Assembly (NCBI GenBank): GCA_965637545.1
Contig: OZ281498.1
Location: 21,948,001-22,012,000 of the forward strand
DNA from: Phallusia mammillata
Taxonomy: Eukaryota
Direction of reading: 5' to 3'
Length of the DNA stretch: 64,000 nucleotides
Both the position numbers and the translations under genes were made by a program. Position 1 is the stretch's first letter. Every line of letters starts with the position of its first letter. A model generated the notes under the pieces. The model was given only the letters and a program-made list of their open reading frames with translations, was not told the DNA's origin and did no database searches. Shown in pieces: positions 1,169 through 16,815 of the stretch.

Positions 1169-1672
1169 AACAACCCAAGGTGTTAAAAGATTTTTTTGTC
1201 ATCACAATGGCGGAAGTAGCACTTGCCGCAAATGTATTTGAAATAGACTTGCAAGTTTTGTATATCTCTCTCAGCGGCCCAGCGGCTGTTTTCGCGACAA
1301 GTGCCTCTTTTGGGATCGCTGGTTATGTTACTTACAAAGTGGTCAACACTAAGCAATATATGAGAGCAATACTGCAACCGTTTCAAGATCTTCCCGGTGT
1401 TATTCGAGCCTGGAGAGGGGGGAGCCTTGTGATAGAAGTTGTGGCTGAAAATGATAAAGTGGCAAAACAGATAAGGGAGAGCTGTAGGTCGGGAAAAATT
1501 TTGAGGGAAATCAACAAAAATCTTAAAGAGTACAAAAATAAATTCAAAGAAGATGCAGGCCATTTTGAAAAGGGAGCCATCGTTAAGTAAGAAAAGCTGA
1601 CAATGCCTTCGCAAGAAGAATGGGCCAAAGCCAAAATCCAATATCAGGTCAAAATCGAGAGAATCATGAAAA
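1169..1672 (+). CDS. TRADD-N-like domain exon, copy 1 (hydrophobic helix + GSLVIEV...SGKIL), with in-frame TAA at 1588-1590
   Basis: Acceptor ttgcag|1169 is phase-compatible with exon 381-474; own ATG at 1207. Clear paralogue of 8516-8987. Homology continues past the TAA (EKLTMPSQEEWAKAKIQY) to an AA|GTAAGT donor at 1673. Pattern GSLxIxV...SGxL resembles invertebrate TRADD-like N-terminal domains (recalled, not searched). Confidence 0.6.
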
Positions 1673-2870: not shown

Positions 2871-5151
2871 ATGCCTGGCGGTGTACACTTGAATATGAGT
2901 AACAATAAGTTTGATGGCAAAACCAATATTAATTCGGCTGATGGCGACATGAATGTGTATCAAGGACAAGGTGTGTTTCTTCAGGGTACTTGTTGGTAAA
3001 ATGATCTCAAAATAACGCGTGTTATCGCGCAAAACGACCCAACACCATTCTTACAAAGGAAAACCTTTTGTTTGTTTTGTGTTGCAGTGGATCAAAGCCA
3101 CCACGGAGACAGTTATACAATGCCACACGCAAACGTTACAGGAGGACACATTGGTCCACATCATGGTAACGGTAAGATGTCTTCGAGCCGTTTTTCATCC
3201 AAATGTTTACGTGTACATTGCAAGGCACAGTAGCAGTCCTTATTTTTTCTACGCTTGCACTTTTAATATAATTGTTGGGTGTGTTTGCTGGTAACAAATA
3301 ATGAGATATGGAAACTGCACTCCACTAAAACAAAAATTAAGCACGTTTGGAAACCAGCATGCAGCGACACGCTTTTTTAAGAAATATTACTTTAAACGAA
3401 TTTTTAATGTACTGTTTAACTATTTTTATTGCAGTGGATCGTCACGTGGGCAACATAACAATGCCACACGCAAACATTGGTGGATCCGTTGTATCCCATG
3501 GAGATACCAACATTGGACGCCGTAAGTGGTCGAAGCAAAAAAAATGTCTAGGTGTCAACGAAAAATTTGACCCACTTTTATTCTATGCAGAGGACGAGAG
3601 TCGACATAAACAGAACATCCAAATGAGAGACACACAAGTGTCTGGTGGCTCTTTGGTTGGAGTACAAGGCTCAGTAAACATCACAAGGGGTAAACTTGGA
3701 GGTTCGAGTATTATTGGTGTGGTGAAAAACACATCCTCAAGAAAAAACAGTCTTCGGTTTTCTTCAAATCCACAACAAAATCTTGGACATTAAAAAAACT
3801 CGACTATGATGTTCTCTCCTGGCTTGCCACATCCCTAACATTTGTTTATGTGCCTAGGTCAAGCACCAGCAAGCGCTGTTCATGACGATCAATCCACTAA
3901 ACGTTCATCGAGTTTAGCGGCAACAAAAGAGGAAGCATACATAAGGCAAGAAAAAGTATAGCCTAATATCTTTTGCATGTGTATACGCATGTTTGTGTTA
4001 ACCATCTGTAAAATTTAATCTAGTTCACCGGCAGCAGCAGGGAGCCCAAACGGAAAGTAAGTTCACAATATCTATTTATACTGCTTTATCCACTAACAAC
4101 GAAAGGATGTGTTAAGGTGTGATTGTAAACACTGCCCCGGAGGAGAAACTGAAGGTGTGTGTTGCAATGACGACGTGAACGCTCTAAAGATGATGAAAAA
4201 ATCTGCTTGGGACTGCATTGTTCAGCATCCTGCATTTGAACCCAATTGCCTTAATCCATACGTGCTTACCAACAGATACAAACGAGAGGCATCCACTGCT
4301 GGTCTTTCCCAGGCAGGGTGAGTACATGTGTTCGATATTCTACCACATTATATATAAATGGTTGCTATCCTTTTTTGGTCTGCAGTGTATATATAGGTAA
4401 ACTTCAAGCAATGCAAAAACTTAAGGCGCGTGAGCTTAACCAAGGCTTTTCGTCAGTGCTTGTCTAGCAGCATGGTCAAAGAGGGTAAATTGACGTTAAG
4501 CTTTCTTAGCTAAAAAGAAGTTAATTGCAGACAGTGTTCACTATTTCGACATATAATGCCTTTTAGTGCTGCTGGTAACAAAGAAATTGGCCGTACTGGT
4601 TGGTATAGCCACTTGTTATATTTATATGTGATACTTGGTCAGTTTGGTTTTAAGCATCTGATTGGCCATTGTGAATCTAGTTCCACCACGGTTTACACCC
4701 AGTTGTGACACAAATAATATGTGGTAAGGCACAGTATTTATTATGTGAGTCCAACAAACTGGAGTACCGTAGTCTGGCTATACTAGCCTGCTGCATGGCT
4801 AATGTCTGCCACCGTCTGCACTGACATGATAAGTCGAAACCGTTTATGTATCGGCATACTGCTTTACAAAAATTAACTTTTTAAGCACATGCATCAGCAC
4901 ATTAGAGTGTTATAGGCGTTTCGGTAGGGTAGGGGCAAAAAGGTTGAAAAACGCCGTTTATAAATTGCATTGAGGTAAATTTTTAGAAAACGAGTCCTGT
5001 TTTTTTACGCAGGAAATTTAAACTCACTGCTCGTAAAGAATACTTGGAGTGGGTGAAGTCGGATAAGGTGCCGTCGTGTGTCCAGAAAGCGATCGACGAG
5101 AAATTTCCGGATTCGTTCGGTCGAGATGGTTCCCAACCAACACTGGAATAA
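2871..5151 (+). CDS. Gene A: R1 + 3x R2 repeats + linker + P2X7 C-terminal (ballast)-like Cys/Zn domain, ~276 aa
   Basis: Exons 2871-2970, 3088-3171, 3435-3521, 3591-3689, 3858-3945 (GC donor), 4024-4056, 4117-4317, 5013-5151 join in one frame. C-terminus CDCKHC...VCC...CIVQHPAF...CL...EYLEW...VPSCV...EKFPD follows the P2RX7 tail pattern (CxCxxC...CC...CI...LPSC...FP). Confidence 0.75.
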
Positions 5152-6142: not shown

Positions 6143-8515
6143 AAATTGTCCACAAACAAACGCCGTTTGACATTTTACATCCGCCACCTGATCTGCAATA
6201 TACGAGCGACAGGAGACTTAATTAAAAAAAGTCCCCGGGTTGATGCCTTTAGGTGAATCACCTGGGTTTTCTCGTCTGTTTTGCTGCAAAGGCTCAATAT
6301 GTGCTTTGTGTTGGCGTCATTGCACTGCGTTCTGGTTCTAGTACTGACAAAATATCGGACAAAGTCGAACAAAGACGAGTTAACTTAAATCTTTTGGGGT
6401 TACGGAAGAAGTTTTAATTATGTTTCCGATCATCCAGCAAGGTACAATAGGCGATAAACGTGTGTGTTAAAACAGAAACAGACATTTTGTTGTTTTACAG
6501 GGTTGTTGAAATGGAAATTCAAACTGAAATTTACGAAATTGTGACCAATTGCCAATATTGTATAAATCTTTACCATATCGGCCTATCAATATTGTACATA
6601 TACTTGCGTCTGCATATGCCCTCACACGAAATGAAGATATCGTATTTTTTGTATATATGTTTTATCCATTCAAATGTAACATGAAATACCATAAAGTTGT
6701 GTTTTGCAAACCTTTTGTTGTTGTAGGTATGGGTGATACACAGCTGATATTTTTTTAGTTTAACTTCCACTTTGTGGCGTATCAGAGAGAAATGAAAATG
6801 TGTAAATTTTAAGTGAAAGGTTAGGACCATAATAATGCACCAAAGTTCTGTTATTCGAAATATTTCGGGACAAGTTAAGACCATTGAGCTAAAGGTTAAG
6901 TGTTATTTGAAAAAGACCACACTGATTTTTCGGACTGTCTGTGTTTGACAAACTTCGTCTTGATCAATTTATCTATCAATATCTTATTGTTGTTTTATGG
7001 TTCGTAGATGTAATAACATATCTTTTTAAAAGTGAATCGAGTCGTACTTGGTCCCGAAAGTTTAATACGATAAAATGACATTACAGTACAGAAGTGATCT
7101 AAAGTGTGATGTTAGCCCATAATAAACCCCGTTTTATTTCAACTAAAGACTGACCCCAACCCAAAAAGTCTGTTCCCGCTAGAATTCCTTTACCCAAAAC
7201 AATTTGGAACTTAAACAATACGTGGGCGGACGACGGCGCGGGATTTACTTCTGAATAAAGGTTTGACATAATTACAAATCCAAAAAGTTAACAACAAGGT
7301 TATAAACATGACGTGCTTACCGGTCAAGAAATGCACAAGTCACACAATGTACGACAGGCAACAATTCAGTGTCGAACAGCATTAATTTCCTATTCGTTAC
7401 CTGAAGAAAACACATAACCGACCAGTTAATAAATACATGCGGCCTCCACAAGGTAATCTAGTCACTAATAAACACAAGGCAGCCTTGCGTACAAGTCGTG
7501 ATACCAATAACAATGCCATGGTTGTGACATCACAAGTACCGATAGTGTGACAGACAATGCTCCAGGTTGCACAAACAAGTTAATCAAGGCTATTGGCGGG
7601 AAACATAGAAAACATAAACGTCTGTACAATAGCAAAGAATGGAAAATATTTTTCTATAATTACGAAATCGGTCGATAAAAATTGTGGAATATATATATAT
7701 ATTGCCCAATGTCATCGTCAGTTCCTATAAAACCAAATAAAACATCTATAAAAGAAGAAGAAAACAATGGCGGTGTAACAGTTACTTTCCTGACCTTTCT
7801 TTCGATTCGATTTTACAGTCACTTTTAATAGCTCGGATTTACGACCCCTTTCGTATCATCTTGCGTGTTGAGACGAGTCTTCATTCAATAAAGCTGTTTG
7901 CTCACTAGCTGAAAAACGCAAGACTTTACCGTTAAATAACGTAATACCAAAAGTAACGCTCTTAAGTTCAGTGCTGTAATAATCTGAAGGGCCATGTACC
8001 GTAAACCTGTCGTAAGTTTTAATACCCTCTGTGTGTGTTAACTTCTACATGTACCACAACCTTGCTTTTTCAGCAACTTTCATCTAAGAAACCAGGTGTG
8101 TAGGCCTATTTGTTCGTTAGGCTACAAGTTTGGCTATTTCGTACAGCATTTAAACCAGTTAAACTAATGTGAAAAGCAAAACTGGAATTGCACCAGGTTG
8201 AAAAAGCTTTTTTAGTTTTGCTGTTTCGTATAAACACTACATACTTGATTTGAGGGGTGGATCTGGCAAAAAAGTAAAGTGGCTGTTTTGTGAACAGGAG
8301 TAAATCTTGGATCTGACTGAAAGTGACGCTCTCCAAAACAAAGTGACCAATTAAGATTCAGGAGTATATATTGTACTTTGGAAAAACCAACTGACCTCGT
8401 TTTTAAATGCATTTGTGCGATTTCTTTGCTAACGACGTTTATTACATTCATAAGATTTCTTACATTTACAGAAAAAAACAGGGTCTTAAAGTATTTGGTG
8501 ATCACAAATGTGTAA

Positions 8516-11500
8516 ATGACAGGCGTAGTTCCACTTCAGCTGGGCGCAAATTCTTTTAAAATAGATTTGCACGTTTTAAATATCTCCCTTAATGGCCCAG
8601 CGGCGGTTTTTGCGACAACTGCCACTTTTGGAGTTGGGAGCTATGTTGTCTATAAACTGGTAAACAGCGAGCAGTATATGAGAGCAATACTTCAACCTTT
8701 TCAAGATCTTGCTGGTGTTATTCGAGCGTGGAGAGATGGAAGCCTTGTTATAGAAGTTGTTGCTGAAAATGATGAAGTGTCAAATCGAATTAAGGAGGTT
8801 TGCCTGTCGGGGGAAATTTTGAGGGAAATCAACAAACGTCTTGAAAAGTATGAAGAAGAATATAAAGAAGATGTTGGTCGTTTTGATAAGCTTGATATCA
8901 TTACGGAAGAAACGCTTGCGATGTCGTTGGACAAATGGGCCAAAACAAAAGCCCAATATCAGATTACCATAAAAAAAATAATACAAAGTAAGTCAAAAAA
9001 ATGGTTGACAAATGTATACCTTTATGTTTTCTTTAATAAACAACCGAAAAATACATTTCATTTGGCCCAATAATAAAGCCACATTATTCAAATTCAAAAA
9101 ATAGCTTCAAGTGTGTCTCATCACAAGTCTTTTGACTGATTTTTACCAATGATGTCTTAGTTAATACAAATATACTGTTACCTTTTCGATACACAATTGT
9201 TTGAAAACCCATTTGTTTCTGCTTGAAGGAACAATTATGTTGTTTAAAGACAGGGGCCCTTTTAAAATTAGGCAATAAACATTTTTCCACGGAAAATGAT
9301 GAAGGTGGTTATTCATTACATAGGAAGTATAAATATAAATTACCAACATTTTAGGATCCATTTCTTGTGTGAACATAAGAACTGGTAGCAATGTGTTGCC
9401 AATGTTTGTATTTTTGCCAAACTTAAATCTAAAACCAAATTTGTATCCTCCCATTGATCCAGATTTTACAAAACAGACAAATTTTTAGCTGTACATGGGA
9501 AACATTAAAAATATGTTTATAAATTTTTTTTCTTGTGTAGAAATATCAGAAATAGGTAAGGGTCATCCAAACATGCCACCCACTCATTCACCTAAGTCAT
9601 CTTTGCTTGGGGTAAGTCTTATCACATTACTTTCACTTTAAAGTTCTTGGAAACCAATTGTTCTTTGCTTTTAAGTTTGCTTTAAACCAACTGTAGTAAA
9701 TATTGTATTCTGGATTGGTTTTATGGCAAGATTGCTGTCAATTGGTGTACTTAAGCAGTTAGGCTTAGTGGTGGTATAAAATAATAAAGAGTAAATTACA
9801 TATACCACTTTATTGTAGATTGATTAATTTGTTTTAATAATTTTAAATTTTATCAAGCAGATTGGCAAGCCAGAAGATTCACAAAGGCCGCCAAAGTCGG
9901 TCAATCAACCACAATGGTACGAACAAAAAGACTTGAACATAAAAGAGGATTCACCCGAGAGGTCAGTTTTCAAACTTGCAAAGATATACTGTTGCCCTCA
10001 TTTTCGTATGGTTTAATGGTTGCTTTGTTTATAGGCAACCGACACAGCCCCAAGGTATGTATCGCTATTTAATGGCCTTTTGAGGTACAGTCAAACTTCG
10101 ATACTGTGCCACCCTTTGGGACCGAAAGAAAGTGGCATAGTAGCGAGGGTGGCATAATAGCGAAGGTCGGTTGTAAAAATAGCCTTGTGACGTGACAATG
10201 TACTGTAATGCCACGTTGTGTTGTACGATTGCAATTTATTACAGTATACAGTATAAGGTACAGTATGCAGTATAATTTATTACAAAAAACGGATAGATCG
10301 TGCATAGAACAAACAGGATTTGTTAGTTTTGTCGTGACACAAGCACGGAACGGCGTTTGCATAACTCGCTGAAAAGCTGTGAAACCTCTTAACATGACCA
10401 CGTTTGTTTACTCAACGATTTGTTTTTCATGTTTTCTCTGTTTTATCATGAGTTCAAACCGAAAATTGTCAATTTTCAATCCGGAACCAGACCGTTAATA
10501 CAGTAATACTGTACTCTCATGTGTCATAGTATCAAGGGTAAGGGGTGGCATAGTAAATATATTTTCTATTGAATTTAGTTGGTGACGATCAAAAGTGGTA
10601 TAGTATCAAGGTGGCATAGTATCGAAGTTTGACTGTATATTTAAAAAACTTTGGTCAGTGCTGCCCTACAACAATAATCCATCCTCTCTAAATTAGCGAT
10701 TTTAACCAGGGAGTCGAACCAGAACTGAACCCGAACCCGCGAATTTCGATTTTCTACAAACACAAACCGGAGTTAAACCGCTTATTTTGCTTAGCGTTGG
10801 ACCCGAACCGGAACCGAACCAGTAAAAAATGCATTTTGTTTTATATTTTGCGATTTTTTTCAAAACAGTGCATGGAAGAATGCACCAGATAACACTTATA
10901 GGGCGTGTCAAAAATAAAACAGTGCACGGGCAAAAGGCTTTTGGAGTTTGATAAGGCCAGTTAGATGATGGGTAGAATTAAATTAAAACGAATAAAAATT
11001 TGAACCGGTTTAAAAACCGCAAACCGGTTCTGATCGGATAATTTGCCCAAACCGAAACAAAACCCGAACCCGAAAATATACATTTTTGAAAACCGAACCC
11101 GAACCCGAACCCTTAAAAACAAAACCAAGTGAACCCGAACCGAACCTGAACCCATATGACAAGCGGTTCGACTCCCTGATTTTAACACAATCTGCCTTTT
11201 TTACGTATGTGGCGTTTTTCCATATTATTTACTGTATTTCGAACAGACAAAATGATTCACGTGATAGACGCAAAGTTTTCTAACGGTGCCCATGGTCGGC
11301 AATATCAAACTTTGACCACAGTGTAAAACTCATTTCTGTACATGTGGTTATGTTGAAGGCGCAGTAGGTCCCTCTTACATCCAGTCCACATTTCGGAAGT
11401 TAAAAGTGTCAACGGAGGTTAAAAGCATTGACAGTGGATATGGGGAGTCATCCTCGTGCGATACCAGTCCACAAACATGCATCTTTCGCTCTGGAAGCAA

Positions 11501-14500
11501 CGGTGACTTTGTTTCAACATATCCTTAAAGCATACTTAAAGCAATGTTAACATTGCACACTGTTTCGACCTATAAGGTCTCTCATGTTAACATTAGCTTC
11601 AAAATTCAGGGGCGACCAAAACACAGCATTCGCTTGTCAATGTCGCTTAAAGAAACATGTCGTTTATGGCCTACAACAGTGGTTCTCAACCTTATAAGTT
11701 TGCGGACCGGTAAACTTTCAAACCAAATTTTGCGGACCAGTGTACTTTCAAAATCAACCCAAAATGTAATCCCGACAAAACACGCAATTCAAAAGAAGTA
11801 TGAAAAATTCAACTTAATGAGAAGTTTGCTGCTGTCTGTTTGATATCATACGTGTTAAATGAAGTTTCTACAAGGCGAAGTAGAGCGTTGACTTCCACAC
11901 GATTTCTCTGTCTTTTAACATCTTGCATTTTGCAATTGAGATATAAAATTGTAATATATTTGGCGGACCGGCAGAAAAGTTGACACGGACCGGCACCGGT
12001 CTGTGGACCGGCGGTTGAGAACCACTGGCGTTCAGCACCCTTGTTTCTGGAACATTGTAAACGAAATAATGTATTTCTTGAGAAATTGTGTTTGTTTAGT
12101 CACAGACAGTGGCAAAAGTTCCAAAGATGATGAACACGCGCCTTCAAGTTCAAGCCCGAGCCTACCAAAGCCACCAACCGATGTGTACCAGAAAGGAGAC
12201 CCTGGTAAATTGAATGATGTATCCATGGTACAGTTTTCTGAAAGTGTACTCAATTACGTTGTTTGGCGTCTACAAACCAATAATTTTGTTACGTATTAAC
12301 TCTGTATTGTATTGTCTGCATTTTGATAATTGAAATCATTTTTTGCCTTTTAGGAATAATAACGTGTCAAACTTTCCAGTAGTGTTTAAATTTTGTTGTT
12401 GGTTAAAAGGAGGAACACGAAGAAGCAATATTGAACATCAGTCATGGTACCACGATGTGTCCAGAGAAGTAGCCGAAGAAATGGTACTGAAATTAAGCAA
12501 GGTTAGTAGGATGACTGCAGGGACCTTGTTTAAACAAGTATTGTTTAGTTGAGATAAACATAAATTCATAACTGGGATCAGTCCTGAAGCGTCTATGCAG
12601 ACCAGCGATCACGGCACACTCATATATAAATCACAGTGGTGAATTCTTGCAAGAATCAAGCAAAAATGTCCGGGCCGTGTCCAAATACGTATGGCTTACA
12701 GGTGCAACCAAGTCTGGGTCGGACATGACAACCGTGTCTCAACCTTATATGAATGTATGGCTAAGGGTTGACATTGAAACACCCCCATACATGGGGCGTA
12801 CCTCAGGATTATGTTTGGTCCATGTACGTTCCGTACCAACGGCCATACAATTGTACCCTTGTATGGTCCACGCCTGACAATCCCTAGCTTGTTGCGTTGT
12901 TACGCCACACTTTACCTAACATGCACCGAACACCCACCTTGCTAGTTTTTCTATCGGCTTTCCGGAGATGTACGGAATATGACTCACACATTGCTTTTTT
13001 TCTTAATTTTATTGCCACAAATACGAACGCAAAATGGAAAATCACCAAAGGTAAACGTACGAAATACCGTTATTTAACGTCGACGCACAATGTTCGATTT
13101 CGGCGAGCGGTTGCAACTTGTTGTTGATGAAGGTTTTAGAAAAATCTCAATCGTTCACATTTTTACTTTCCCGCTGAACTTTGACGTGCGCCCATGAAAG
13201 ATATCTAAACAATAAATAAAATAGATTTAATCGATTTTACAAAACATGAAAATGCGCAGTAGTTTTTCAAAACTATTTACCGTTTAAATACTTTTCGCTA
13301 TTTCAAATGATGGCTCGCACGCAAATATAAAAAAATTTACGGTACAAATAAAGATACAACGAAATCAATAGGACAACAAGTGCTTACCTTTTCATACATG
13401 AATAAGTCGACGTCCAGTAACATGTTGCAGTTCGATGAGACAGAATAAAGTATATTCCTAAGGTGTATTCCGAAAAGTAGACTTAACTGGAAAGCTTAAG
13501 TAACGCATGCTGCCTCAACAACTCAAACTTCCACATTAACACAATGTGGCCACACAGCCAAGTAATACCACTAAGTTTCCTTAAGTTCCTTTTTCATCGT
13601 CACTTGGCCAATAGCACTGCTTGAGCTTAAACGCGCCTTTGTTCGAAAGTTGCACTGTGGCGCGAAAAGGAAGAGCAAAACTTCAAAGGCATGATTGATC
13701 GACGTCTCAAAACTGTGCGATGGTCGGCTTTTGTAGCTGCCAGCGGGGTGCGTCACTTACGGCAAAAAACATACGCCCTTAGCTGAACAATCGGTTGATA
13801 CATAAATCTTTAAAACTGCATTAACAGTTAAGCACCATTCAGGCGATTTCTTAACAAGTGTCGATGGAACGACAAAACAAAAACTTTTTTTACGTTTATG
13901 CAAACCATCAATTCAATTCAACACCTAACTTTATAAGTATACTTAATTCATTCCAGGATAACAGAAAATTCATTTTATAAGCAAATATTTAATTATAACT
14001 AGCCTACATGTTATGTTATTCCATTAGAGATTAGTACTTTTTTCCTAATTGCTAAACTTTCTGTCTTTATGTGACGTGAATCGAATCGATAAAAAATGTA
14101 GTGTTCACAAGCAACATCTGTGGCGCCGTACAAAATTGTGACATGGCCATGCTTGTCTTTTCATACCATAATCAATTGTACCAGACCGTCATTAATAACC
14201 GGACGAGGGCAGTGTATGATTATTCCAAGTCAGGACCAGGTATGGAAATCCGTTAGAAAATCTAAACTTATATGAATGGGAAAAGCTTGGGGCTGCCGTT
14301 CATTGGCCGTTTGGTACATATACAACAGATAATCGTGCCCAAGAGTCCAACGGCCGAGCGTAAAGGGTAGATAATTTTCGTCTGGGGGGTGACCGGCTGA
14401 TTCGGTATAGAGCCTTCAATGAGCCTGGCGTACAAGTATTGTTTAGTTTTGAATTAGTAGCAACCATCAGAGCTAATGGCAGTGTTTGTACAGTCCGAAC

Positions 14501-16815
14501 CTGATGTAAGATTTAATATTTAAAAGGCTCGTTTATGTATTTGTATGGGAATACAATAGAATTTCTGCTTTAAAAAGACCAAAGTCGAAATTAGGCACTG
14601 AACCACATAGGTGTAACTTAGCACGAAATTTACTTGGTTATTGCTCGTACGCACATGGAAAAGCAATCAGGTGATTTTTGTGCTGTGATAAGGCAACTGA
14701 AAGTGCTGCGTGTAACTGAAAGACTTACGTTTTATCTTTATTTTTTCTTCCTTAATTCGGTGCCAAGAATTTCGCTTGTTTGCTTTTGAGGTCGGTTAGG
14801 GTATAGTTGTAAACTACATTGTAACAGGTTCGTTTACTGGTACTTAATAACGACAATCCCTTGTTTTTCTGTCTTTTAGCTTTAAATCATTTTGTCGTGA
14901 TTGTTTTAGTACTAATTTTCATATCGATTTTAAAGAACTGATGATGCCACTTCGTTGAAATATATATTACTTTACATAAACCGACAAATTCTGTTTTAAC
15001 CAAGGATTTTATCGTCTATTGGTATGACTGTTAGGGATGTTCAAAGTAGAATAATTGGGTATTCTAGAATAATTGATTCTAATCTAGAATATCGAATCCA
15101 ATTCTTATATTATTTTTGACTGCGCAATCATTAATCTTGACAACAACTAAAGTAGACTAGTTTAATACATTATAAAACACATTTTTGATTTATAATGTAA
15201 AAAAAGAACCAAACAAAACAATGAAAAACAGTGGAAAAAAACTTTGCACAACTGCATTGAAACTAAATGACCCAAAATCCACTAAGCCAGAAAAATTAGC
15301 ATCAGGTTAAAAAATAACTTTTACGATTTTATTTAGTGATTATTATTGCCTTCAGTAGAAGTAACTATGTTGTAAGCATGCTGCGGTAATTCGATTTGTT
15401 GATTGTATAGGACTGACATAGACTCCCTAGTGTACTAATATATAACGTTTGTTAACCTAAAACAACTTCAAAACATACACCCTAGCAAAGTTAAAACATT
15501 GGGTGATGTAAAGCTGGGACATTAGGTGATTTTAAATTCCAATTAAGCTACCAGCGATTTTGCAACACAAAATGTGAACTTTGCAGCGTGTACTAACTGC
15601 ATTCTTATGATCGTATGGGGTTAAAAAATGATGCAAACGTCTTATGTTATGGGATTCCATCACTGTTTTTGCAATATTAACAGACAATCCCATGCTTCCA
15701 ATCGCTGCCTAACGCCACGACCGTTAAATTTTTGTTGTGTCAGAAAAAAAGTCCGAAACAATTAGATGCTGGTAAGACGTTGCAAGAAAGTCGCCGGTAC
15801 GTCATTTAATGGCATAAGCATAATCACATGATCAGATGCGTAACAAGTGCGCTAATCGTTAATTATGCCTCCAACGCACAACCGTCGCTATGGCGTTGTT
15901 GAAGCGACTCGTGACTTGGCGTTATATCGTACAGCGCTCACTGATTTGACGGCGACGATGCGCTTGCCGTTTTTGTAACTGGTACAATGACCGGGCGTCG
16001 ACCTTAAAGCGTAACACATGTGTTTACATTTTTTCCAACGAGAGCACACATTTATATCGGTTCCAATTACCCGAAATAAACGGCAAAAATGGATTCGAAT
16101 CTAACTGGATTCGTTATTCTACTTTGAACATCACTAATGACTGTGTTATAGTTAAAAAGGTAAACAGTGATAGTCAGTTTACCGAAAACTGATGATGCCA
16201 TTTAGGCAAAATACATTTCTTCACCGGTTTTGTCGTCTATTGGTTTTAATGTTTTATGACCGAAAACTGTCTTGTTGTCCAGGACGGCTCCTTCCTGGTT
16301 CGACCGGGACGTGGTAAGGACAACCCGTACACCATTACAGGCTGTGATGGCAAGTTCTCTTGTTACAATCTGCGCATTAGGAAGAGAGACGACCGGCAAT
16401 ACGCCCTTGGCTCTAGAAAGGTACGAAATCACTTCCTACCTGTATTAAGTGTCTGCAAGATATGATTTTCACAAACTGTCGTAAAAGATATTAAGCTCAA
16501 TATATTGTCCTTATATAAAACTCAATTAAACCTAAACCCAAACCCAAAAATTTGCCTAAAATGAGTGCTATTATAATGTAATTATCCTTATTACGCTATT
16601 AATCATTCATTTTAATGTAAGTTTGTCTTAGAACTTAGTCCTTAAAATAATAATTGTTGCTTGTCAAGCTAAACCAACTAAATACAGTATTGGTCTGTTT
16701 ACAGCCGCACGAGCGGACATTTACCTCCGTAAGCGATTTAATCGAGTACTACAAGACTCATCCACTTACGCTCGCCAACGCTGAAGGTTCGATAACTCTC
16801 GCTGGGCCCCTTTGA
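8516..16815 (+). CDS. Gene D: hydrophobic helix + TRADD-N-like domain + Pro/Ser linker + C-terminal SLP-76/BLNK-type SH2 domain, ~367 aa
   Basis: Exons 8516-8987, 9541-9611, 9861-9961, 10035-10054, 12106-12204, 12410-12501, 16283-16420, 16705-16815 are phase-consistent (1104 nt). SH2: WYHDVSREVAEEMV / DGSFLVRPG...NPYTI...YNLRIR / FTSVSDLIEYYKTHPL. The SH2 call is strong; the join to the TRADD-N exon is inferred from phase only. Confidence 0.7.
10088..10635. mobile_element. Tc1/mariner (pogo/Tigger-like) MITE
   Basis: TIR CAGTCAAACTTCGATAC / GTATCGAAGTTTGACTG flanked by TA on both sides. Confidence 0.85.
10707..11178. mobile_element. hAT MITE with internal GAACCC/CCGAAC repeats
   Basis: TIR CAGGGAGTCGAACC / GGTTCGACTCCCTG; 8-bp TSD ATTTTAAC on both sides. 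Confidence 0.9.
11677..12027. mobile_element. hAT (Charlie-like) MITE
   Basis: TIR CAGTGGTTCTCAACC / GGTTGAGAACCACTG; TSD degenerate. Confidence 0.8.
12572..12637 (+). repeat. Short dispersed repeat of unknown class, also at 62760-62825
   Basis: CTGGGATCAG(T/G)CCTGAAGCGTCTATGCAGACCAGCGATCACGGCACACTC...AAATCACAGT is near-identical at both intronic sites. Confidence 0.7.

What the first reader, a model, noticed from the sequence alone, without database searches (positions are those of the whole stretch)
8516..16815. TRADD-N-like domain joined to an SLP-76/BLNK-type SH2 domain
Seen: eight exons join in frame from a hydrophobic GxxxG-like helix (GPAAVFATTATFGVGSYVVYKLV) and GSLVIEV...SGEILREI domain, through a PxxP/Tyr linker (QWYEQK, PSLPKPP, DVYQK), to a C-terminal SH2. 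Established: vertebrate SLP-76-family adaptors have this C-terminal SH2 but a different N-terminus (SAM in SLP-76); TRADD-N-like domains occur in invertebrate death/immune proteins. Inference: a possibly membrane-anchored adaptor bridging phosphotyrosine signalling and death-type signalling, sitting inside the repeat-module cluster.
Basis: partly seen in the sequence, partly recalled or inferred. Interest (0 to 1): 0.72.

Follow-up and report, generated by a model that had tools for sequence, protein, structure and literature searches.

The report
TRADD-fold module fused to BLNK-like adaptor
A sea-squirt (Phallusia) gene really does splice an exon encoding a TRADD-N-shaped interaction domain onto a BLNK/SLP-76-like phosphotyrosine adaptor, a lineage-specific exon-shuffled fusion that may link tyrosine-kinase signalling to TRAF/RIPK-type immune or death signalling.

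Summary
The core of the finding holds. Spliced RNA contigs from three studies join exon 1 (from 8621) through GT..AG introns to the first SH2 exon. A public Phallusia mammillata protein (CAB3265127.1, 363 aa, misnamed "basic salivary proline-rich protein 2", 97% identical) carries both parts.

Corrections:
- There are nine coding exons, not eight, giving 1254 nt and 417 aa.
- No RNA covers 8516-8620, and the public model starts at M55.
- The hydrophobic stretch is not a credible membrane anchor.

N-terminal module: no Pfam model hits it. An AlphaFold model (pLDDT 79) matches TRADD-N (1f3v_A) best: Z 9.2, 122 residues, next hit 6.6. It has the GS turn typical of TRADD-N.

SH2 domain: nearest to BLNK.

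Origin: a Phallusia paralogue (491 aa) shares the linker and SH2 but not the module, and homology starts exactly at exon 2. This points to exon shuffling.

The same module occurs 7 kb upstream (1207-1672). In Ciona it is fused to a RIPK1-like kinase.

TRADD-N plus SH2 was reported once in a sponge expansion (PMC8195603). I therefore rate this a new variant of a known kind. The bridging mechanism is inferred, not shown.

The parts
8516..8987 (+). Coding exon 1 (157 codons + 1 nt, phase 1 donor): TRADD-N-fold module. Model elements: b1 aa15-26, insert aa27-50, a1 51-62, b2 66-73, b3 76-83, a2 86-116, b4 125-137, a3 138-156.
   Evidence: ORF. RNA contigs cover 8621-8987 and join 8987>9541. AF2 model pLDDT 79, pTM 0.72. 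TRADD-N 1f3v_A Z 9.2. Homologues align from aa 11-29 onward. dN/dS against the paralogue is 0.20 for aa 1-54.
8594..8662 (+). Read here as a family-specific insert between b1 and a1, not a membrane anchor.
   Evidence: KD19 maximum 1.25; homologues 0.49-2.21. Model shows short helix/strands with pLDDT 56-65, below 50 for aa 38-42. The Ciona homologues carry charged residues here.
8738..8743 (+). G75-S76, the 'uS' motif in the b2-b3 hairpin turn.
   Evidence: The turn lies between E66-73 and E76-83. GS is kept in 7 of 8 family members, and P0004 has G-A-S. Kaur et al. 2021 give this motif as the conserved TRADD-N signature (PMC8195603).
9541..9611 (+). Coding exon 2 (linker start, (K)ISEIGKGHPNMPP...). 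Homology to the module-less paralogue P0010 begins here.
   Evidence: Joints 8987>9541 and 9611>9861 are GT..AG. Translation. BLASTP P0001 106-230 against P0010 129-257.
9861..9961 (+). Coding exon 3 (linker: RPPK, QWYEQK).
   Evidence: pieces 9860-9959; translation; tblastn.
10035..10054 (+). Coding exon 4, a 20-nt micro-exon ((R)QPTQPQ(G)).
   Evidence: There are 19 unaligned contig letters between 9959 and 11356, and about 19 nt of depth in bin 10000-10199. AG/GT flank it in the sequence. P0001 reads ERQPTQPQGAVG.
11359..11502 (+). Coding exon 5 (linker: PSYIQS, DSGYGES).
   Evidence: Present in contigs of all four runs; joint 11502>12100 is GT..AG. Translation. Homologous to P0010 ~190-245.
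12100..12204 (+). Coding exon 6 (linker: PSLPKPP, DVYQKG).
   Evidence: Joints seen in all four runs; translation.
12410..12501 (+). Coding exon 7: start of the SH2 (WYHDVSREVAEEMVLKLSK, aA arginine).
   Evidence: pieces 12409-12502; alignment A3.
16283..16420 (+). Coding exon 8: SH2 core (FLVR arginine, NPYT, YNLRIR, QYALG).
   Evidence: Pfam SH2 E 5.5e-5. The sole PDB hit is BLNK 2eo6 at E 0.0044. tblastn with P0001.
16705..16815 (+). Coding exon 9: SH2 C-terminal part and stop codon.
   Evidence: tblastn P0001 322-363; generic SH2 matches.
1207..1672 (+). Paralogous copy of the module exon, with the same phase-1 donor. It has an in-frame TAA at 1588-1590 in this haplotype.
   Evidence: tblastn 64% identity, E 4e-63; translation; dN/dS 0.25.

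Best explanation
This is an expressed nine-exon gene of the ascidian Phallusia mammillata. It encodes a roughly 417-aa cytosolic adaptor made by exon shuffling.

Origin. A duplicate of the tunicate BLNK/SLP-76-like linker gene kept its Tyr/Pro-rich disordered linker and C-terminal SH2. It exchanged its proline-rich N-terminal ~128 residues for one exon encoding a TRADD-N-fold (RRM-like) interaction module. A copy of that module exon lies 7 kb upstream.

Likely mechanism (inferred):
- The SH2 docks the protein on a tyrosine-phosphorylated receptor or scaffold.
- The linker tyrosines (YEQK, YIQS, YGES, YQKG) and the PxxP/RPPK motifs are phosphorylated or bound by SH2 and SH3 partners, as in BLNK and SLP-76.
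- The TRADD-N-fold module recruits a TRAF/RIPK-type partner through its exposed sheet, using the GS-turn surface.
- Phosphotyrosine signalling would thereby feed an NF-kB or death-type innate immune output.

What is shown: the splicing, the domain identities and the paralogy. What is inferred: the partners and the signalling output.
For: One transcript: spliced contigs from three studies, and public protein P0001 / CAB3265127.1.

Module fold: AF2 pLDDT 79. TRADD-N 1f3v_A ranks first at Z 9.2 over 122 residues, next hit 6.6. Foldseek prob 0.96, TM 0.43. ESM Atlas shape row 1 is a DED + TRADD-like_N cluster at TM 0.51. The Atlas feature search gives 15 of 30 hits in TRADD-like_N clusters, score 0.93. 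The GS sits in the b2-b3 turn.

SH2 type: Pfam E 3.1e-11. Shark BLNK is the only non-tunicate hit (E 1.7e-8; 35-39% identity). Three BLNK clusters lead the Atlas structure search at TM 0.88-0.90.

Exon shuffling: homology to paralogue P0010 starts at exon 2, and a second module copy lies at 1207-1672.

N-terminus is coding: homologues align from aa 11. dN/dS for aa 1-54 is 0.20, p 5e-4.

Death/NF-kB context: the Ciona homologue fuses the module to a kinase closest to RIPK1, 73.6 bits against 56 for IRAK4.
Against: - No Pfam TRADD_N or TRADD-like_N hit for the module or any of seven homologues, even at E<=10.
- A family profile finds no TRADD in PDB sequences.
- The Foldseek E-value is only 8e-3, and many generic ferredoxin-like folds score Z 5-7.
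- TRADD was not in the top 50 of the representative-based wide search.
- The model rests on an 8-sequence alignment.
- RNA contigs and the public model all lack 8516-8620/8677. The expressed protein might therefore start at M55 and lack b1.
- Against PDB sequences the SH2 ties with PLC-gamma C-SH2 and SHP2 N-SH2, at 48.5, 47.6 and 47.3 bits.
- The bB7 serine of the pTyr pocket is glycine (FLVRPG) in both tunicate paralogues.
- No binding partner was tested.
Confidence: 0.66

Rival explanations
1. The expressed protein starts at M55 (window 8678). The module is then truncated, lacking b1, the insert and the start of a1, and probably does not fold. The gene would act simply as a second BLNK/SLP-76-like adaptor with a vestigial leader.
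For: All four runs' contigs end at 8621-8680, with zero depth over 8000-8620. The public transcript-derived model P0001 starts at M55. A 3-codon uORF (ATG 8508) overlaps the 8516 ATG.
Against: Codons 1-54 are under purifying selection against the paralogue: dN/dS 0.20, p 5e-4, the same as the rest of the exon. Four homologues, including Ciona, align upstream of M55. In the model b1 (aa 15-26) is an integral strand with pLDDT 75-89. Contig starts move 5'-ward as depth rises, as expected from coverage decay at a transcript end.
Confidence: 0.2
2. One reading: residues 27-49 form a transmembrane helix. The protein would be a membrane-anchored (LAT-like or type II) adaptor.
For: There is a 23-residue uncharged stretch. 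The homologous stretches in P0002 and P0005 reach KD 2.21 and 1.76. An earlier unchecked note (s1-388514) reports the same module with a hydrophobic segment elsewhere in this genome.
Against: KD19 maximum is 1.25, below 1.6. P0004, P0006 and P0009 score 0.49-1.39 and carry charged residues in this stretch. The stretch lies between b1 and a1 of one globular domain, so a membrane span would split the sheet. There is no signal peptide-like N-terminus.
Confidence: 0.1
3. The N-terminal module is a generic ferredoxin-like/ACT-like domain that only converges on the TRADD-N shape. It would have no evolutionary or functional tie to TRADD-type signalling.
For: No sequence-level link exists to PF09034 or PF20694. 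Dozens of ferredoxin-fold proteins score Z 5-7. The alignment behind the model is shallow.
Against: TRADD-N stands 2.6 Z units above all other folds and aligns over 122 residues, including the C-terminal helix. The language-model feature search independently points to TRADD-like_N clusters. The GS turn motif is present. The Ciona fusion partner is RIPK1-like.
Confidence: 0.15

Closest known systems
BLNK / SLP-76 (LCP2) / CLNK adaptor family
   Same: Both have a C-terminal SH2 closing the protein and a long disordered Tyr- and Pro-rich linker. The SH2 is 35-39% identical to shark BLNK and shares the PYT, YN(I/L)x(I/V)R, (Q/E)YALG and F(P/T)S(I/V)xD(I/L)IE motifs. BLNK clusters are the top structural matches. 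The paralogue P0010 has the ordinary family layout.
   Different: The N-terminal SAM domain or acidic YxxP region is replaced by a TRADD-N-fold module. The linker is short, about 150 aa. The bB7 Ser is Gly. Against PDB sequences the SH2 is not uniquely BLNK-like.
TRADD N-terminal domain (PDB 1F3V; Pfam PF09034) and the TRADD-like_N superfamily (PF20694; Kaur et al. 2021, PMC8195603)
   Same: The same RRM-like a+b sandwich with a trailing helix, best structural match at Z 9.2. The GS is in the b2-b3 turn. It is a single-copy domain placed next to a variable signalling region, which is the architecture theme described for metazoan TRADD-N expansions.
   Different: No HMM-level sequence match. 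There is an extra small-residue/hydrophobic insert between b1 and a1. No Death or DED domain is present in the protein. Tunicates are not mentioned in that survey.
Amphimedon (sponge) Death-TRADD-N-SH2 proteins listed by Kaur et al. 2021
   Same: A TRADD-N domain and an SH2 domain occur in one polypeptide.
   Different: The sponge proteins start with one to three Death-like domains and belong to the NCOA6 clade expansion. Here there is no Death-like domain. The SH2 and linker are of BLNK/SLP-76 descent, shown by the paralogue.
Ciona intestinalis XP_018672854.1 (P0006), annotated 'G-type lectin S-receptor-like serine/threonine-protein kinase RLK1'
   Same: It has the same N-terminal module, including the b1 region, the insert and the GS turn.
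   Different: The C-terminal partner is a RIPK1-like kinase domain rather than a linker plus SH2.

Membership tests
TRADD-N superfamily (PF09034 / PF20694; Kaur et al. 2021) | RRM-like two-layer b-a-b-b-a-b sandwich resembling TRADD-N | tested here: met
   AF2 model pLDDT 79, pTM 0.72. 1f3v_A ranks first at Z 9.2, rmsd 3.3 A, 122 aligned residues; next hit 6.6. Foldseek prob 0.96. ESM Atlas DED + TRADD-like_N cluster at TM 0.51.
TRADD-N superfamily (PF09034 / PF20694; Kaur et al. 2021) | Conserved tiny-residue + Ser (uS, usually GS) motif in the b2-b3 turn | tested here: met
   G75-S76 lies between strands 66-73 and 76-83. GS is present in 7 of 8 family members. The motif definition comes from PMC8195603. 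Residue-level equivalence to TRADD Ser67 was not checked.
TRADD-N superfamily (PF09034 / PF20694; Kaur et al. 2021) | Significant match to the Pfam family HMMs | tested here: not met
   No hit for exon 1 at E<=1. No hit for homologues at E<=0.1. No hit for any of the 8 members at E<=10.
TRADD-N superfamily (PF09034 / PF20694; Kaur et al. 2021) | Binding of a partner (TRAF2 MATH domain in TRADD) through the exposed sheet | not testable with these tools
   Needs pull-down or yeast two-hybrid assays with Phallusia TRAFs and RIPK-like proteins.
BLNK / SLP-76 / CLNK adaptors | SH2 domain at the C-terminal end | tested here: met
   Pfam SH2 on P0001 residues 263-343, E 3.1e-11. Exon 8 alone gives E 5.5e-5. 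The stop codon lies about 20 residues after the domain.
BLNK / SLP-76 / CLNK adaptors | SH2 closer to this family than to other SH2 families | tested here: inconclusive
   For: shark BLNK is the only non-tunicate hit; exon 8's sole PDB hit is BLNK; three BLNK clusters lead the structure search. Against: PDB phmmer ties PLC-gamma, BLNK and SHP2 at 48.5, 47.6 and 47.3 bits. No phylogeny was possible.
BLNK / SLP-76 / CLNK adaptors | Disordered linker with phosphorylatable tyrosines and proline-rich SH3 ligands | tested here: met
   Exons 2-6 encode YEQK, YIQS, YGES, YQKG, RPPK and PSLPKPP. They are homologous to the linker of paralogue P0010. Phosphorylation itself was not tested.
BLNK / SLP-76 / CLNK adaptors | N-terminal SAM domain and/or acidic YxxP region | tested here: not met
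   No SAM hit. Homology to P0010 begins at its residue 129, after its DDVYLPID motif. The N-terminus is the TRADD-N-fold module instead.

The most novel reading that the evidence does not exclude
The module may be a tunicate-specific, Pfam-invisible branch of the TRADD-N superfamily, marked by a b1-a1 small-residue/hydrophobic insert. It would behave as a mobile N-terminal exon cassette placed ahead of diverse signalling domains. Examples are the BLNK-like SH2 adaptor here, a RIPK1-like kinase in Ciona, possibly the neighbouring 'gene A', and a GTPase elsewhere in this genome. Together these would define an undescribed innate-immune or allorecognition adaptor network in the sister group of vertebrates. 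In that network Syk/ITAM-type phosphotyrosine scaffolds would be wired directly to TRAF/RIPK-type outputs.
Probability: 0.3. Interest if true: 0.72.

Novelty: new variant of a known kind. Interest (0 to 1): 0.52.

Why it matters
BLNK and SLP-76 are the central scaffolds of vertebrate antigen-receptor signalling. TRADD is the entry adaptor of TNFR1 signalling to TRAF2 and RIPK1. In vertebrates these two systems sit on separate proteins.

A tunicate gene that joins a TRADD-N-fold domain to a BLNK-like linker and SH2 gives a concrete, testable case of how invertebrate chordates rewire these modules. A Ciona relative joins the same domain to a RIPK1-like kinase.

The finding also shows three further things:
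- The tunicate TRADD-N-like family escapes current Pfam models.
- The public Phallusia protein is misnamed and probably N-terminally truncated.
- A canonical BLNK/SLP-76-like paralogue exists in ascidians.

The fusion is so far seen only in Phallusia, and its partners are unknown. Its general importance is therefore moderate.

Tried and rejected
- Pfam on exon 1, on the paralogous exon and on all homologues gave no TRADD family.
- phmmer and a family profile against PDB sequences gave nothing relevant; best were ESCRT-II at E 1.3 and an antitoxin at E 0.06.
- The word-index search with exon 1 found nothing. With alignment A1 it added only one new member, P0009.
- Single-sequence AlphaFold of exon 1 was unusable at pLDDT 39.6. 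Only the 8-sequence alignment gave a usable model.
- The representative-based VIA wide search listed only generic ferredoxin-like folds, Z at most 7.1, and did not show TRADD. The match appeared in Foldseek and its VIA second look.
- P0003, a bacterial TIR-STAND-TPR protein, hit only through a 39-residue repeat stretch. I rejected it as spurious.
- The look-up of encoding contigs found no record for P0001, so the public mRNA's 5' end could not be read. The P0002 contig (Logan DRR090687) gave no useful context.
- ORFs of 'gene A' at 3347-3790 and 4109-4318 gave no Pfam hit.
- Literature searches found no paper on a tunicate TRADD-N/BLNK fusion.
- Whole-protein analyses used the public protein P0001 instead.

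Full report
**Observation**

I found candidate RNA runs of the same organism and laid contigs of four runs from three studies on 8000-13999.

The contigs carry canonical GT..AG joints at 8987>9541, 9611>9861, 11502>12100 and 12204>12410. X5 record 13 (1355 nt) and X1 record 1 (1369 nt) run from exon 1 into the first SH2 exon. They then continue about 487 nt beyond the stretch I laid.

Nineteen contig letters between 9959 and 11356 fit 'ag' plus the first 17 nt of a 20-nt micro-exon at 10035-10054. An additional 144-nt exon at 11359-11502 is present in all four runs.

The coding model has nine exons:

| Exon | Coordinates |
|---|---|
| 1 | 8516-8987 |
| 2 | 9541-9611 |
| 3 | 9861-9961 |
| 4 | 10035-10054 |
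| 5 | 11359-11502 |
| 6 | 12100-12204 |
| 7 | 12410-12501 |
| 8 | 16283-16420 |
| 9 | 16705-16815 |

This totals 1254 nt, or 417 codons plus stop. Every exon is open in its phase.

I did not send the joined model to any tool. Each exon was searched by reference.

**Identity of the gene**

An exhaustive HMMER search with exon 1 returned P0001, which is 363 aa and 97% identical. P0001 is Phallusia mammillata CAB3265127.1 / A0A6F9DNW2, automatically named 'basic salivary proline-rich protein 2'.

P0001 contains all nine exons (tblastn) but begins at M55 of my model. The window is therefore ascidian DNA and the gene is already in public databases, misnamed. The differences from the window (for example QWYEQK against QWYQQK) also appear in the RNA contigs (table 3) and look allelic.

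**The 5' end**

No contig of any run covers 8000-8620. Contig ends lie at 8621, 8645, 8654 and 8680, and they reach further 5' as depth rises. With P0001 starting at M55, the expressed start is uncertain.

Three results argue that 8516-8677 is coding:
- Homologues P0002 and P0005 align from residue 11, P0004 from 22, and Ciona P0006 from 29.
- Against the paralogous exon at 1207-1672, dN/dS for codons 1-54 is 0.20. Twenty of 41 changes are synonymous against 24% expected, p 5e-4. This is no weaker than the rest of the exon at 0.29.
- In the structure model residues 15-26 form strand b1 of the sheet, with pLDDT 75-89.

I put about 0.7-0.75 on M1 as the functional start.

**The N-terminal module**

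No Pfam family matches it or any of seven relatives, even at E<=10. Sequence and profile searches of the PDB found nothing.

The language-model search of the ESM Atlas pointed to TRADD-like_N clusters: score 0.93, 212 of 256 shared features, 15 of 30 hits.

Single-sequence AlphaFold failed at pLDDT 39.6. With an 8-sequence family alignment (A2) the model reached pLDDT 79 and pTM 0.72. Its order of elements is b1(15-26), insert(27-50), a1(51-62), b2(66-73), b3(76-83), a2(86-116), b4(125-137), a3(138-156).

Structure searches with that model gave:
- Foldseek against the PDB ranked TRADD-N (1f3v_A) second, at E 8e-3, prob 0.96, and the highest TM (0.43) among the top hits.
- The VIA second look ranked 1f3v_A first, at Z 9.2, rmsd 3.3 A and 122 aligned residues (model 14-157, chain 8-157). 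It stands 2.6 units above the IS200 transposases, acylphosphatases and PII-like proteins that follow.
- The Atlas shape search put a DED + TRADD-like_N (DEDD) cluster first, at TM 0.51.

G75-S76 sits in the b2-b3 turn. That is where Kaur et al. 2021 place the conserved 'uS' signature of the superfamily (PMC8195603). It is kept in 7 of 8 family members.

The second refutation condition, no TRADD-N fold similarity, is also not met. Membership in the superfamily is likely. It rests on fold, motif and language-model evidence, not on an HMM match.

**The hydrophobic stretch**

GPAAVFATTATFGVGSYVVYKLV (aa 27-49) reaches only 1.25 on a 19-residue Kyte-Doolittle window. The homologous stretches range from 0.49 to 2.21 and carry charges in the Ciona proteins.

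In the model it is a poorly defined insert between b1 and a1 of one globular domain. A membrane-spanning helix there would separate b1 from the rest of the sheet. I rate a true membrane anchor at about 0.1. A peripheral, membrane-touching or partner-binding loop cannot be excluded.

**The SH2 and linker**

Pfam SH2 matches P0001 263-343 at E 3.1e-11.

Evidence for the BLNK/SLP-76 type:
- The only PDB hit of exon 8 is BLNK 2eo6.
- The only non-tunicate hit of the full-length word search is shark BLNK, at E 1.7e-8 and 35-39% identity.
- The three best structural neighbours of the Atlas model are BLNK clusters at TM 0.88-0.90, including a mollusc SAM-SH2 cluster.

Against this, the whole SH2 ties with PLC-gamma C-SH2 and SHP2 N-SH2 when compared with PDB sequences. 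I could not build a phylogeny. The type is supported but not proven.

Both phosphotyrosine-binding arginines (aA, and bB5 of FLVR) are present. The bB7 serine is glycine in both tunicate paralogues.

**Origin**

P0010, a second Phallusia protein of 491 aa, shares the SH2 (66% identity) and the linker. P0001 106-230 aligns with P0010 129-257, including SE(I/V)GKGHPN, RPPK, DSGYGE and GSN. P0010 has a proline-rich N-terminus instead of the module.

Homology begins at the first residues of exon 2. A 64%-identical copy of the module exon, with the same phase-1 donor, lies at 1207-1672.

The simplest history is a duplication of the BLNK-like gene followed by capture of a locally duplicated module exon. 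Among 1.84 billion representative proteins, no other protein combined this module with an SH2. At this sensitivity the fusion looks Phallusia-specific.

**Mechanism (inferred)**

By analogy with BLNK and SLP-76, the SH2 docks on a phosphotyrosine site. The linker is phosphorylated and binds SH2 and SH3 effectors.

By analogy with TRADD (1F3V), the module's sheet and GS turn recruit a partner such as a TRAF.

The Ciona homologue P0006 fuses the same module directly to a kinase domain whose best solved relatives are RIPK1 (E 1.7e-19, 73.6 bits, against IRAK4 at 56 bits). This ties the module to RIPK/TRADD-type signalling by association. No partner has been tested.

**Comparison and novelty**

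Kaur et al. list SH2 among the variable C-terminal domains of the Amphimedon Death-TRADD-N expansion. TRADD-N plus SH2 is therefore not unprecedented. That paper does not mention tunicates, and I found no paper on this fusion.

What is new here:
- the BLNK/SLP-76 descent of the partner;
- the absence of any Death-like domain;
- the Pfam-invisible tunicate branch of the module, with its insert;
- the clear exon-shuffling history.

I class it as a new variant of a known kind, with moderate interest.

An earlier unchecked note of this scan (s1-388514) reports the same module ahead of a GTPase domain elsewhere in this genome. If confirmed, it would support the cassette reading.

Noticed in passing
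window 1207-1672 (+): A paralogous copy of the TRADD-N-fold module exon: 64% aa identity, the same phase-1 donor AAA|GTAAGTC, and its own ATG at 1207. It carries an in-frame TAA at 1588-1590 in this haplotype. A possible alternative donor GTAAGA at 1587 would give phase 2.
   Followed up: partly
P0006 (Ciona intestinalis XP_018672854.1) and P0009: In Ciona the same module is fused to a kinase domain closest to RIPK1 among solved structures. The public name 'G-type lectin S-receptor-like kinase RLK1' is misleading. P0009 looks like a fragment of the same type, ending in a GxGxxG kinase start.
   Followed up: partly
P0010 (Phallusia mammillata, 491 aa, 'basic salivary proline-rich protein 4'): This is apparently the canonical ascidian BLNK/SLP-76-like adaptor: a Pro-rich N-terminus, DDVYLPID and QDVYEQED tyrosine motifs, and a C-terminal SH2. 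It is misnamed in public databases and its gene is not in this window.
   Followed up: partly
window 8508-8519 and 8643-8663: A 3-codon uORF (ATG TGT AAA TGA) overlaps the 8516 start codon. An out-of-frame ATG at 8643 opens a 6-codon ORF ahead of M55. Either could modulate start-site choice.
   Followed up: no
window 10600-11200, 11550-11800, 12550-13200: Intronic stretches are covered at high depth by many unrelated RNA contigs with loose ends, including the CCGAAC-rich repeat around 10700-11180. These are expressed dispersed repeats inside introns 4, 5 and 7, not part of this mRNA.
   Followed up: no
window 8687, 8735, 8904, 9921: The RNA contigs and the public protein share alleles that differ from the window: I58V, D74N, T130K, and E>Q in the QWYEQK motif. 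One of the linker tyrosine motifs is therefore polymorphic.
   Followed up: partly
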